From Styela clava (taxonomy: Eukaryota), in contig NC_135261.1 of the NCBI RefSeq assembly GCF_964204865.1, positions 4,154,001-4,218,000 of the forward strand: 64,000 nt of DNA, written 5' to 3'. The notes beneath the pieces were generated by a model. That model was not told the DNA's origin. It saw only the letters and a program-made list of their open reading frames with translations, and made no database searches. The position numbers and the translations under genes were made by a program. This document shows positions 20,101 through 23,100 of this stretch, piece by piece; within the stretch, counting starts at the first letter, position 1; each line of letters begins with the position of its first letter.

Positions 20101-23100
20101 ATACTCATTTAAATTTAGATAAAAAATAAAAAAACAAAAACGGCTGTTCTGGTTCTCACTATCTCGCCAAAATGTTACACAATTTTCGTGCTTCACCCAA
20201 CTTACTGGTGATCTATAGTACAAGAAGTTTCCCATCTCCAATACAGACCAATATGCGGCCTGATGTTACACTTATGTATAAAATAGTGTGTCGGAGCTTT
20301 GTATAGAATATCTTTGCGCCACTGAAAGGTGGTAAATGACTTTTTTTATTTTTTTAAATCATACACAACATTAAAAACTTTGTTTTACTCTGAAAAAGCT
20401 TTTGACAAGTAGCCAATTATATGCAGCTAACTGGTATGTAATTGAAAAGGCTGGAATATATTAACCATAAGTGAAGTGAAAGTTAATGTGGAAGGGCTAT
20501 CTGAAATTGAAATGATGTGATTTCATCATATGATGTTTTGTCGGATCTCAGAAAATGTATTATGACATCGTAGTAAATTTTTAAAATTTTTATAAAATGT
20601 ATTATGTCAGAAAAACATTTTGAAAAATTAAGTTAAGATTATGCATATCTCTTATAATTCTTTCACAAAAATAACAAATTTTCCACAAATAACAAACATA
20701 ACTTTGTTACCAGAACTCAAAAAATAAACATTCATTGAGTTGAACAATTTCAAATCACATTTCAGGCAATGAATATCATCAGATGCATACCTGAACAATT
20801 CCCTTATCACCAGAGATCCTTTGACGTCTCCCGATATCAAGAATTCTCCTGTTATTGTCATATGATTCAACTTTGACTCCAAACAATCTACAGCAAGATG
20901 TTTCCCATTGATCGAGTACAAATGTAAATATAATTTCTCCTGAAAATGGTTTTGAAATATTTTTTGTTTCAGTGAAATAGTGAAAGTAAATCAGTAAAGC
21001 TCATGCATAGTGAAGTTGAGGGCTAACTAGATTGTGACACAGAATATCAATTAGCACGAATTGTTACTAATGAAGTGGACGAGTTTGGTGATCTTCAACA
21101 AAATTTCTTAATATTTGGACACATTTTGGTCAGATGCAATCCATAAGCAAAACAAAGTTTGCAATAATTTTGACCTCTCGAGAATGTGCCCTCTGCGTTT
21201 TTTGCCCCTGTTGTATTTCTTTTGCACCGTATGAGAGCGGTATTGCCATTTTAAGAATCTCTGTTCTAAATTCTTCATTTTAAGACCTACACATTACCTC
21301 TTTAGCATCTTTCTTTGTGTGAGCATATAAAGCAATGTGTCCTTCCTCAGACAATGCGATGTACGGAACAACTAAAGGATCTGAACAGTTGCTCATAGGT
21401 TGAATAGTACGAACATAGTTGCCTTTCCTTACTGTGTGGATAATGCAAGTACCATCCTGAAACAAATTAAATCCGAATTTAGATTCTAGCGACCAACTCA
21501 ATTATTGAATATGATATAAGTTTTATTCTGAAAGAAAGGAAAACCCCCAAAAAATGACCTGATCATATATTGAATCATAGGACAGGCTTTTCAGTCCAAT
21601 TCGGGTATGAAATAAGTTGGCCAGTTATTTGTTTTTCAGATGCACGAACTTAATGGTAGAGGAAGTCGTAACCGACCAGTAGTTACGTGTACCCGGCGGC
21701 TGCGAGGGGTTCAGGGGGTCCTTTCGCACATAATTTCACCCCGCATGGGATTCAAACCTGCAAAACCACGCAGCGTAATCAGAGGTGCGATGACGTCATT
21801 GACGTGTGTATTCCAAAAGCCATGCACTCTTGTTCCAATCGGTTAACAATTCAGATCAGGTATGGGTATATTAAAAACCGCCTATTGTTTCAGAGGCATT
21901 AATTACCCTGCAACAGGGGGACATCAAAAATGTCTCAAAAACTCATCTCACACTTGCTCTGCCGTTCTGAGTCAAGATAGATGCCAGCATATATAAAGGT
22001 CAGTCGACCTTGTTGACCTTGAAGTAATGCTGGCCCCCTTTCGATATATTTCATGATTATTGTTTGTTTATTCTCACAGCGATATGTACTCTTATGCAAT
22101 GAAATATTCAGAAAATAAATTAATATCTATCTATACTGTAAGACAAATGGTCGAAGTAGGTTAACATAAGCAGGAGATTTAGAGTACTTATATAGAAAGT
22201 GAGATTCACACAATCAGGACAAGCGTTTTTTGTAAAACAACAAAAATATTTTGCAAATCTATCATAATCTAATGCAAGGTTTCCTGAACTTTTTATGCCA
22301 TCGACCCCTATCTGTGAATATTATTTTTCAAGGACCCCTATTCTATGCGGTATCAATTTCTGTGTCTAACCAACGTGGAAAGATGTTCCATTTACAATAC
22401 AACAACACAAACTATATTATGCGATGAATGTGGATGCTTTTCACTGCAAAATTTATCAATACTTTTAGCAATTTGCAACAAGGCAAAACAGACCGAACGG
22501 CAAGTCTCCACCTGTATTTCCTTTCATATTGTCACGGACCCCCTGTGCAGTCATCAGGGACCCTAGGGGTTTCGGACCCCATTTTAGAAAACCCCGACCT
22601 AATCCACATACCTTTGAAGAAGAAACCGCCATATCTAGTTCCGTATTGATCGCCACACACATCACTTCATCCTCGTGCCCATATAATACTTGTAATGGTC
22701 GTTGTGAAACTCCAGTTGATACTCCGTTGTGTTGTATAATCTAGAATATAAAGTTGGATTAGAAATTTACTTTGCATGTTAAACATTCTTTGCATTTTCA
22801 TGCATATTTGATTCAATTTGTACATCCCGCACAGATATGGTATTAATACAGGGGTGGATTGATATCTAGTTCCTGATTCTTATAACAATTATAAAAAACT
22901 ATGAAATACTCATAGGTGCTCCAGAAGTATGCGCACCAAGATGTCGCACAGCCTTAATCTTAACCGGTACACACATACTATGTTCAGGTCATGCCATACT
23001 ATGCCATCTTGGTGCGCATTCTTCTGGAGGTCCAAGACTCATATCCCATGGGAAGCACGTTCCTAACACTTCCAATCACAAAAATCCAATTATGAATCTT

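What the first reader, a model, noticed from the sequence alone, without database searches (positions are those of the whole stretch)
20201..20328. Diverged duplicate terminal exon could swap the last WD40 blade of NBEAL
Seen: inside the last NBEAL intron, a cctttcag acceptor (exon start 20321) has the same phase as the canonical last exon and opens a frame [36 protein letters not shown] (TAG 20213-20215). It aligns with one 2-aa gap to the canonical [51 protein letters not shown]. It keeps L..., I...SV, ILV and DGKL plus the hydrophobic strand pattern, while the nucleotides are highly diverged. A GTAAGT donor lies only 7 nt after the stop. Inference: this is an old exon duplication kept under protein-level selection, giving two isoforms with different final propeller blades, one lacking the C-terminal tail. 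Splicing on from that donor would turn the canonical exon into 3'UTR, and the stop would be too close to the junction for EJC-dependent NMD (50-55 nt rule). I know of no such arrangement in vertebrate NBEAL1/2. It is too short for the ORF track.
Basis: partly seen in the sequence, partly recalled or inferred. Interest (0 to 1): 0.8.

Follow-up and report, generated by a model that had tools for sequence, protein, structure and literature searches.

The report
Duplicated alternative last exon in sea-squirt NBEAL1
In the sea squirt Styela clava, the NBEAL1 gene carries a very diverged second copy of its last coding exon, which public gene models already use to make a protein with a different final propeller segment; this is an ordinary kind of alternative splicing.

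Summary
The window is Styela clava NBEAL1 on the minus strand: RefSeq isoform X3 matches 5 of 5 tested exon peptides at 100%.

The 36-codon frame at 20321-20213 is already in public gene models. 1 of 7 RefSeq isoforms (X4, XP_077975014.1) ends with exactly this peptide; the other 6 end with the canonical exon.

Its likeness to the canonical last exon is probably real homology, but the statistics are modest:
- It is the only outlier among 1,550 acceptor-anchored in-phase frames in the window (score 39, next unrelated 21).
- It ranks second of 2,940 frames against a profile built from 16 other species (E 0.26).

Both flanking splice sites score like real sites of this gene. AlphaFold2 places four strands where the canonical exon has them.

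Against a strong reading:
- Contigs of 3 of 4 RNA-like runs show only the canonical junction, and 3 of 4 cross the alternative exon unspliced.
- No second copy exists in another ascidian's complete last intron.
- Selection is not shown.

Verdict: a new case of a known kind, tandem exon duplication with alternative use. Interest is modest. The scan also noted a possible alternative terminal exon in another gene of this genome (not tested).

The parts
20791..20939 (-). Penultimate coding exon of NBEAL1 (...[13 protein letters not shown] + 2 bases of the split Ser codon)
   Evidence: Joints 17178<>20791 and 20938<>21297 (cut +1) lie in single contigs of X1, X2 and X4. Boundaries were re-derived against RefSeq X1 exon by exon.
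20322..20342 (-). Acceptor of the alternative exon (pyrimidine stretch and CAG)
   Evidence: Sequence read. 9 of 11 pyrimidines at -14..-4. PWM score 6.46 bits, above 15 of 46 real acceptors of this gene; 3.65% of 1,752 intronic decoy AGs score as high.
20213..20321 (-). Alternative last coding exon: (S)[35 protein letters not shown], stop TAG 20215-20213
   Evidence: Identical to the last 36 residues of RefSeq XP_077975014.1, isoform X4. Single copy in the 377-Mb assembly. Modelled as four strands with block pLDDT 82-89.
20200..20205 (-). GTAAGT donor-like site; a cassette exon would end at 20206, giving 116 bases
   Evidence: Sequence read. PWM score 6.93 bits, above 15 of 46 real donors; 2.24% of 2,140 intronic decoy GTs score as high. 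Use of this donor was not observed.
17025..17178 (-). Coding part of the canonical last exon (SLEPV...PLFS), stop TAA 17027-17025
   Evidence: Joint 17178<>20791 in X1, X2 and X4. 6 of 7 RefSeq isoforms end here. Family profile E 1e-15.
16892..17024 (-). 3' untranslated part of the canonical last exon (minimum extent)
   Evidence: Contigs X4 record 17 (16892-17096) and X1 record 3 (16946-17178) run colinear through it.
21298..21456 (-). Third-from-last coding exon ([12 protein letters not shown]...)
   Evidence: Pfam NBCH_WD40 positions 210-252 of 350, E 1.7e-7. Boundaries; same contigs as above.

Best explanation
The segment is a strongly diverged tandem copy of the last coding exon of Styela clava NBEAL1, lying 3.0 kb upstream of the original in the last intron.

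It is spliced to the penultimate exon in the same phase. This gives a minor protein isoform (RefSeq X4) in which the last four beta-strands of the C-terminal beta-propeller are replaced by a divergent set. That isoform ends right after the DGKL strand and lacks the short disordered tail.

Most likely it is a 116-base cassette. The donor 7 bases after the stop would join it to the canonical last exon, which then serves as 3' UTR. By the 50-55 nt rule the stop is too near that junction to trigger NMD.

Shown: the sequence, the phase, the match to the RefSeq isoform, the quality of the splice sites, and fold compatibility in a model.

Inferred: descent by duplication, the cassette mode, and that the protein is made and useful.
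For: - RefSeq X4 ends with exactly this peptide. It is identical to X1 up to residue 2,859, which is the predicted junction.
- The window is this gene: 5 of 5 tested exon peptides match P0179 at 100%.
- The in-register likeness is an outlier: 39 against a maximum of 21 in 1,543 unrelated candidates.
- It is the best non-canonical frame of 2,940 against a profile from 16 other species.
- It keeps the family-invariant core: D, G and K are invariant columns in a 27-sequence alignment.
- Acceptor and donor each score above 15 of 46 real sites of this gene and lie in the top 3.7% and 2.2% of intronic decoys.
- AlphaFold2 gives strands at 338-343, 348-353, 358-362 and 366-369 with block pLDDT 82-89. 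The canonical model has strands at 338-343, 348-353, 360-364 and 368-374 with block pLDDT 87-96, and a tail below 50.
- No paralogue source was found: only the canonical exon matches the last-exon profile significantly in the whole assembly.
Against: - In four RNA-like runs (Logan contigs; 'RNA' is a guess by the tool) only the canonical joint 17178<>20791 appears, in X1, X2 and X4. No joint at 20321 or 20206 is among the 15 of 24 shown.
- Contigs of X1 (20020-20524), X2 (19935-20355) and X6 (20246-20456) cross the exon and the site(s) they span without splicing. X1 and X2 cross both sites; X6 crosses only the acceptor. Their depth is 3-5, like other intron pieces.
- I did not see the evidence behind the RefSeq model.
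- The homology statistics are modest: window-wide E 0.26, one tie in local score, and a Gumbel expectation of 0.08 in the intron.
- The exon is farther from every canonical exon (10-14 of 36 identical) than canonical exons of different phyla are from Styela's (15-22 of 38). It lacks the near-invariant His and the PI motif, as a decaying copy would.
- It is absent from another ascidian's last intron.
- The fold models lean on an alignment made of canonical sequences.
Confidence: 0.62

Rival explanations
1. Splicing noise on a decaying duplicate. The copy arose by duplication but is no longer, or never was, useful. A few transcripts use its still-good splice sites, the annotation pipeline turned them into isoform X4, and the protein has no selected role.
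For: - No alternative junction in the contigs of four runs; unspliced contigs cross the exon.
- Extreme divergence, with loss of otherwise near-invariant residues.
- Absent in another ascidian and in the Ciona, Clavelina and Phallusia models.
- A 36-codon open frame in 35% G+C DNA survives by chance about 7% of the time (my estimate from base composition).
Against: - Third positions are saturated (29% identity), yet there is no frameshift and only one in-frame 2-codon gap.
- The hydrophobic strand pattern is kept and is modelled as four strands.
- Both splice sites are of real-site quality.
- Contigs drop rare variants, so cannot show absence.
Confidence: 0.25
2. Chance resemblance. An unrelated piece of intron became an exon, and its likeness to the canonical exon is a coincidence of hydrophobic, AT-rich codons.
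For: - One unrelated plus-strand frame ties the local score of 41.
- The family profile gives only E 0.26.
- There is no nucleotide similarity in exon flanks.
- Pfam finds nothing in the 35-residue peptide.
Against: - Anchored at the acceptor and in register it scores 39 against a maximum of 21 in 1,543 candidates.
- Two different scorings both rank it first among non-canonical frames.
- The matches fall on the family's most conserved columns: I..SV, ILV and DGKL.
Confidence: 0.08
3. Same exon, different mode. It is a true alternative terminal exon: transcripts read through the GTAAGT and are polyadenylated inside the intron, near 19,900-19,950. It would then not be a cassette joined to the canonical exon.
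For: - AATAAA occurs twice on the minus strand, near 19,950 and near 19,900.
- Colinear contigs run from the exon down to 20020 (X1) and 19935 (X2) without using the donor.
- No 20206>17178 joint is listed.
Against: - The same contigs also run upstream across the acceptor, so they look like unspliced RNA or DNA rather than a terminal exon.
- AATAAA is expected about once per 850 bases at this composition (my estimate).
- A donor in the top 2.2% of decoys sits 7 bases after the stop.
Confidence: 0.3

Closest known systems
Tandem exon duplication with alternative or mutually exclusive use of the copies, including duplicated terminal exons (review PMC9013439: Drosophila pip, PGRP-LC)
   Same: - Neighbouring copy of an exon in the same gene, strand and splice phase.
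- The protein carries one copy or the other.
- The copies encode the same structural element.

[quoted passage not shown]
   Different: - Here the copies are so diverged that only protein-level comparison finds them.
- The upstream copy carries its own stop and probably a donor, so exclusivity at the protein level comes from the stop, not from splicing logic.
- Use of the copy is known only from one automated gene model.
RefSeq model XP_077975014.1, neurobeachin-like protein 1 isoform X4 [Styela clava]
   Different: It is an automated prediction. Nothing in the record as shown to me says the exon is a duplicate of the last exon or what it does. No paper was found.
Stop-containing cassette exons that escape NMD by the 50-55 nt rule (recalled general knowledge, no call)
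   Same: The stop lies 7 bases before a good donor. A downstream junction would therefore be too close to mark the mRNA for decay.
   Different: Use of the donor is not shown. Unlike typical 'poison' exons, this one would yield a near-full-length protein with a complete fold.
C-terminal isoforms of other BEACH proteins, for example the mouse Lba/LRBA forms lacking the WD repeats
   Same: Alternative 3' ends change the C-terminal region of a BEACH-WD40 protein.
   Different: As I recall them, those forms truncate the propeller. Here a blade segment is swapped for a homologous one.

Membership tests
NBEAL1 (BEACH-WD40 protein gene) | BEACH domain | tested here: met
   Pfam PF02138 on two single exons: E 2.4e-13 (50.5 bits) and E 3.2e-7 (30.5 bits), both above the 26.8-bit cut-off.
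NBEAL1 (BEACH-WD40 protein gene) | Neurobeachin-type beta-propeller after the BEACH domain | tested here: met
   PF20426 hits on single exons: E 1.7e-7 at positions 210-252 and E 2.1e-5 at 177-209. These are below the whole-protein cut-off because exons were searched one at a time. The stored RefSeq protein carries PF20426.
NBEAL1 (BEACH-WD40 protein gene) | Identity with an annotated NBEAL1 | tested here: met
   5 of 5 window exon peptides match P0179, NBEAL1 isoform X3 of Styela clava, at 100%. 47 exon segments covering residues 736-2909 of X1 were placed in the window.
Tandemly duplicated alternative exons | Copies adjacent in one gene, on the same strand and in the same splice phase | tested here: met
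   Both follow the exon ending at 20791 with the same 2+1 split codon. They lie 3.0 kb apart on the minus strand.
Tandemly duplicated alternative exons | Sequence homology between the copies beyond chance | tested here: inconclusive
   Likely but modest.
- Anchored score 39 against a maximum of 21 in 1,543 candidates; Gumbel expectation 0.08 in the intron.
- Family-profile rank 2 of 2,940 at E 0.26.
- Shuffles: 7 of 5,000 reach the score; one tie in the window.
- No nucleotide-level similarity beyond 13 bases.
Tandemly duplicated alternative exons | Transcripts carry one copy or the other as coding sequence | tested here: inconclusive
   Gene models: 1 of 7 RefSeq isoforms ends with the copy and 6 of 7 with the canonical exon. 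RNA-like contigs of 4 runs show only the canonical joint, in 3 runs, among 15 of 24 joints shown.
Tandemly duplicated alternative exons | Both copies conserved in related species | tested here: not met
   In an ascidian locus from metagenomes (L004-L006, Ciona-like C-terminus, complete last intron of about 1,330 bases) neither tblastn nor the profile finds a second copy. The Ciona, Clavelina and Phallusia models end canonically. No stolidobranch relative could be examined.
NMD-immune stop-containing cassette exon | Stop less than 50-55 nt upstream of the last exon-exon junction | tested here: inconclusive
   The geometry is met: 7 bases lie between TAG and GTAAGT, and the donor is of real-site quality. 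The junction 20206>17178 was not observed.
WD40 propeller blade segment | Can supply the strands that the canonical exon supplies | tested here: met
   AlphaFold2 on the stored RefSeq C-termini, each with 26 homologues.
- Alternative: strands 338-343, 348-353, 358-362 and 366-369; block pLDDT 86/89/82/84; pTM 0.81.
- Canonical: strands 338-343, 348-353, 360-364 and 368-374; block pLDDT 96/93/87/89; pTM 0.84.

This is a model only, guided by canonical sequences.

The most novel reading that the evidence does not exclude
Styela, and perhaps other stolidobranch ascidians, keeps a lineage-specific 'blade swap' in NBEAL1. A regulated cassette would replace the last four strands of the propeller with a fast-evolved variant that lacks the conserved His and PI motifs and the tail. 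That would change which partners dock on this face of a membrane-traffic scaffold, while the mRNA escapes NMD because the stop sits 7 bases before the donor.
Probability: 0.3. Interest if true: 0.5.

Novelty: new member of a known kind. Interest (0 to 1): 0.3.

Why it matters
If the alternative end is made and selected, it would be a natural experiment in exchanging part of a beta-propeller within one gene. It would also be a handle on what the C-terminal face and tail of NBEAL1 do, which is poorly understood.

As it stands, the exon is already in public gene models and the mechanism is a familiar one. The main value is practical: protein-level, phase-aware comparison of an exon with its neighbouring intron can find duplicates that nucleotide searches miss.

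Tried and rejected
- Other copies in the assembly: a DNA search and a peptide search each found only the locus itself.
- Origin from a paralogue's last exon: the last-exon profile hit only the canonical exon significantly (E 2.8e-19), plus two hits at E 1.8 and 4.2. Rejected.
- Duplicated flanks: blastn of 800 bases around each exon gave only AT-rich noise.
- Short database proteins like the 46-residue open frame: no candidate. That search sees only proteins of 26-80 residues, so a blank means little.
- Pfam on the alternative peptide: nothing. On the canonical exon: only a weak EML propeller hit at E 0.07.
The one metagenome scan gave 26 loci.
  - 15 of the 26 had both a penultimate-exon and a last-exon hit, so the last intron was bracketed.
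  - None had a second last-exon-like frame in that intron.
  - Only L004-L006 are ascidian. The rest are more distant, so this says little about sister species.
- Secondary profile hits in L013 and L020 (E about 0.03) lie upstream of the third-from-last exon. I took them for other blades without checking further.
- Within-species selection: read laying listed no differences inside 20213-20321 (25 differences were not shown). The contigs there differ from the window at 14 of 505, 6 of 421 and 1 of 211 bases, so the test could not be done.
- A first attempt at exon boundaries by tblastn resolved only 4 introns. It was replaced by exact-word chaining, which resolved 46 of 46.
- No search or fold used a spliced model of my own; that joined step was left out. 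The two folds used C-terminal parts of stored RefSeq proteins, which are themselves NCBI's spliced models.
The Zenodo tables of PMC9013439 were not seen.
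Full report
**What is there.** On the minus strand the window carries the 3' two-thirds of a BEACH-WD40 gene.
- Single exons hit Pfam Beach (E 2.4e-13 and 3.2e-7) and the neurobeachin propeller PF20426 (E 1.7e-7 and 2.1e-5).
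- Five exon peptides from the window, searched one by one, match stored protein P0179 at 100%. P0179 is named by NCBI 'neurobeachin-like protein 1 isoform X3 [Styela clava]'.
- By exact-word chaining against RefSeq isoform X1, 47 exon segments (residues 736-2909) and 46 GT..AG introns were placed in the window.
- The last intron runs from 20790 to 17179.

**The observation.** It holds in every detail.
- The penultimate exon ends at 20791.
- An acceptor, cctttcag, ends at 20322.
- From 20321 the same split-codon phase reads [36 protein letters not shown], with TAG at 20215-20213.
- GTAAGT lies at 20205-20200, seven bases after the stop.
- The canonical last exon starts at 17178 and reads SLEPV...PLFS, with TAA at 17027-17025.
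- The window has no N.

**Is the likeness more than chance?**
- Local alignment alone is not compelling. The score is 41 and 7 of 5,000 shuffles reach it, but one unrelated plus-strand frame among 2,940 six-frame segments of the window ties it.
Of 1,550 such frames of 25 or more residues on both strands, this one scores 39. The best of the 1,543 that overlap neither exon scores 21 (mean -9.4, s.d. 8.4).
- About 46 unrelated candidates lie in this intron. A deliberately conservative Gumbel fit expects 0.08 at or above 39 there.
- Independently, a profile built from the C-termini of 16 other species, without Styela, finds the canonical exon at E 1e-15. It ranks the alternative frame second of 2,940 at E 0.26. 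Third is another WD40 exon of the same gene.
- The shared residues are the family's most conserved ones: I..SV, ILV and DGKL.
- At nucleotide level only 13 bases over (G/R)DGKL are alike and the flanks show noise.
- I take common descent as likely, roughly nine in ten, but not proven.

**It is already a gene model.**
- The 90% cluster of P0179 holds seven RefSeq isoforms. Six end with the canonical exon.
- One, XP_077975014.1 (isoform X4, stored as P0281), ends ...[45 protein letters not shown].
- X4 equals X1 for 2,859 residues and departs exactly at the predicted junction.
- As I recall NCBI's pipeline, extra isoforms are made only where transcript alignments support them. I did not see that evidence.

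**RNA-like data.** The look-up of sequencing runs listed no run on record as RNA. X1-X7 are guessed to be RNA. I laid X1, X2, X4 and X6 (Logan contigs) on 16000-21600.
- Single contigs of X1, X2 and X4 join 21297/8-20938/9 and 20791-17178, at depths 8.7, 12.8 and 80.2. These runs therefore hold spliced RNA of this gene, and the canonical junction is the assembled one. X6 showed neither.
- No joint at 20321 or 20206 is among the 15 shown; 9 more were not shown.
- Colinear contigs cross the alternative exon unspliced: X1 20020-20524 (depth 4.9), X2 19935-20355 (4.2) and X6 20246-20456 (3.0). X1 and X2 span both splice sites; X6 spans only the acceptor. Their depth is like that of other intron pieces.
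- Contigs drop rare variants, so this shows the alternative form is not the major one in these samples. It does not show that the form is absent.
- All 10 differences listed inside the confirmed exons are synonymous third-position changes. The species is variable enough for a selection test, but differences inside the alternative exon were not listed.

**Splice sites.** Position weight matrices were built from the gene's own 46 donors and 46 acceptors.
- Alternative acceptor: 6.46 bits, above 15 of 46 real acceptors scored leave-one-out. 3.65% of 1,752 intronic decoy AGs score as high.
- GTAAGT donor: 6.93 bits, above 15 of 46 real donors. 2.24% of 2,140 decoy GTs score as high.
- A donor of that quality seven bases after the stop favours a 116-base cassette joined to the canonical exon, which would then be 3' UTR. 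By the 50-55 nt rule (recalled) the stop would be NMD-immune.
- The rival is read-through to an intronic poly(A) site. AATAAA occurs near 19,950 and near 19,900. This is not excluded.

**Fold.** I folded the C-terminal parts of the two stored RefSeq proteins, each with 26 homologues.
- X4: mean pLDDT 81.1, pTM 0.81. The alternative exon forms strands 338-343, 348-353, 358-362 and 366-369, with block pLDDT 86/89/82/84.
- X1: mean pLDDT 84.9, pTM 0.84. Strands 338-343, 348-353, 360-364 and 368-374, with block pLDDT 96/93/87/89. The last residues, 378-385, fall below 50.
- So the copy can supply the same four strands with a shorter final one, and what it lacks is a tail modelled as disordered.
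- The alignment rows are all canonical, so this shows compatibility only.

**Age and selection.**
- The copy shares 10-14 of 36 residues with every canonical exon compared: Styela 12, Ciona 12, turtle NBEAL1 14.
- Its best substitution scores are to Styela's own exon (51) and to Ciona (47). Non-tunicates give 31-43.
- Canonical exons of other phyla share 15-22 of 38 with Styela's.
- The copy has therefore evolved much faster than the original, under relaxed or changed constraint.
- Ascidian contigs from metagenomes (L004-L006, Ciona-like C-terminus) hold a complete last intron of about 1,330 bases with no second copy by tblastn or profile.
- The Ciona (1), Clavelina (3) and Phallusia (1) models end canonically.
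- Of 43 listed isoforms or models from 8 other animal groups, none has an alternative last blade. Scallops vary only in the tail, and one starfish isoform is truncated.
- Of 390 stored proteins, only X4 has this ending, and it has the shortest tail after DGKL: 7 residues against 12 or more elsewhere.
- No stolidobranch relative could be reached, so neither 'old' nor 'selected' is shown.

**What is known.**
- Tandem exon duplication with alternative use of the copies is a familiar source of isoforms. PMC9013439 (listing, abstract and passages read) describes mutually exclusive duplicated terminal exons in Drosophila pip. It cites about 10% of animal genes as holding tandemly duplicated exons.
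- PMC5740500 was seen only as a listing and the start of its abstract.
- No paper holds 'Styela clava' with 'neurobeachin', 'NBEAL1' with 'exon duplication', or the five terms.
- The searched library lacks most subscription journals.

**Verdict.** The finding is a real feature, correctly read in its main point, and already present in automated public gene models. It belongs to a known kind. What is new is recognising the X4 end as a diverged duplicate of the last exon that swaps the propeller's final strands. Whether this isoform matters to the animal is open.

Another agent of this scan also named this genome Styela clava (s1-825773), which agrees. A first-stage note (s1-826055) reports a possible alternative terminal exon from duplication in another gene of this genome; I did not test it.

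Noticed in passing
window 16000-16186, 16561-16934, 17683-18056, 18244-18617: Summed contig depths in the thousands in all four runs, with many loose ends and odd joints. These look like interspersed repeat families in the last intron and the 3' flank of NBEAL1.
   Followed up: no
window 20832-20898 and 17097: All 10 differences listed between the run contigs and the window inside confirmed exons are synonymous third-position changes. One contig has up to 6 in the 148 bases of the penultimate exon. This points to very high silent diversity and strong purifying selection on the real exons.
   Followed up: yes
window 16141-16663: Colinear contigs in X1, X2 and X4 lie downstream of the canonical stop at depths like those of the exons (11.8; 8-21; 39-57). 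The 3' UTR may extend more than 800 bases, interrupted in the contigs by a repeat.
   Followed up: no
window 23899-24120, + strand: A plus-strand frame antisense to a WD40 exon ties the local alignment score of 41 to the canonical last exon. I took it for chance; it shows how weak local scores are here.
   Followed up: partly
stored proteins P0179 and P0281 (RefSeq X3 and X4): X3 and X4 have the same length by coincidence and already diverge at residue 1373. The seven isoforms range from 2,874 to 2,909 residues, so the gene has further alternative exons upstream, some probably inside this window.
   Followed up: no
stored protein P0043 (Saccoglossus kowalevskii NBEAL1 model): The stretch STPDSDPLVYVQVPKSQSRSFIDH occurs twice around the BEACH/propeller border, with BEACH sequence missing between the repeats. 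This is probably a gene-model artefact.
   Followed up: no
L004, L005, L006 (JGI metagenome contigs): Three contigs carry the same ascidian NBEAL1 3' end, with a Ciona-like C-terminus. This is host DNA in metagenome assemblies. Their last intron is about 1,330 bases, against 3,612 in Styela.
   Followed up: partly
L003 and L007 (metagenome contigs): Their last-exon peptides are of vertebrate NBEAL1 type. L003's is identical to that of a stored vertebrate protein, so human origin cannot be excluded. I left it alone after noticing this.
   Followed up: no
window 36225-36431: A first-stage note on this window reports an inverted pair of hammerhead-like motifs in an NBEAL intron. Not examined here.
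   Followed up: no
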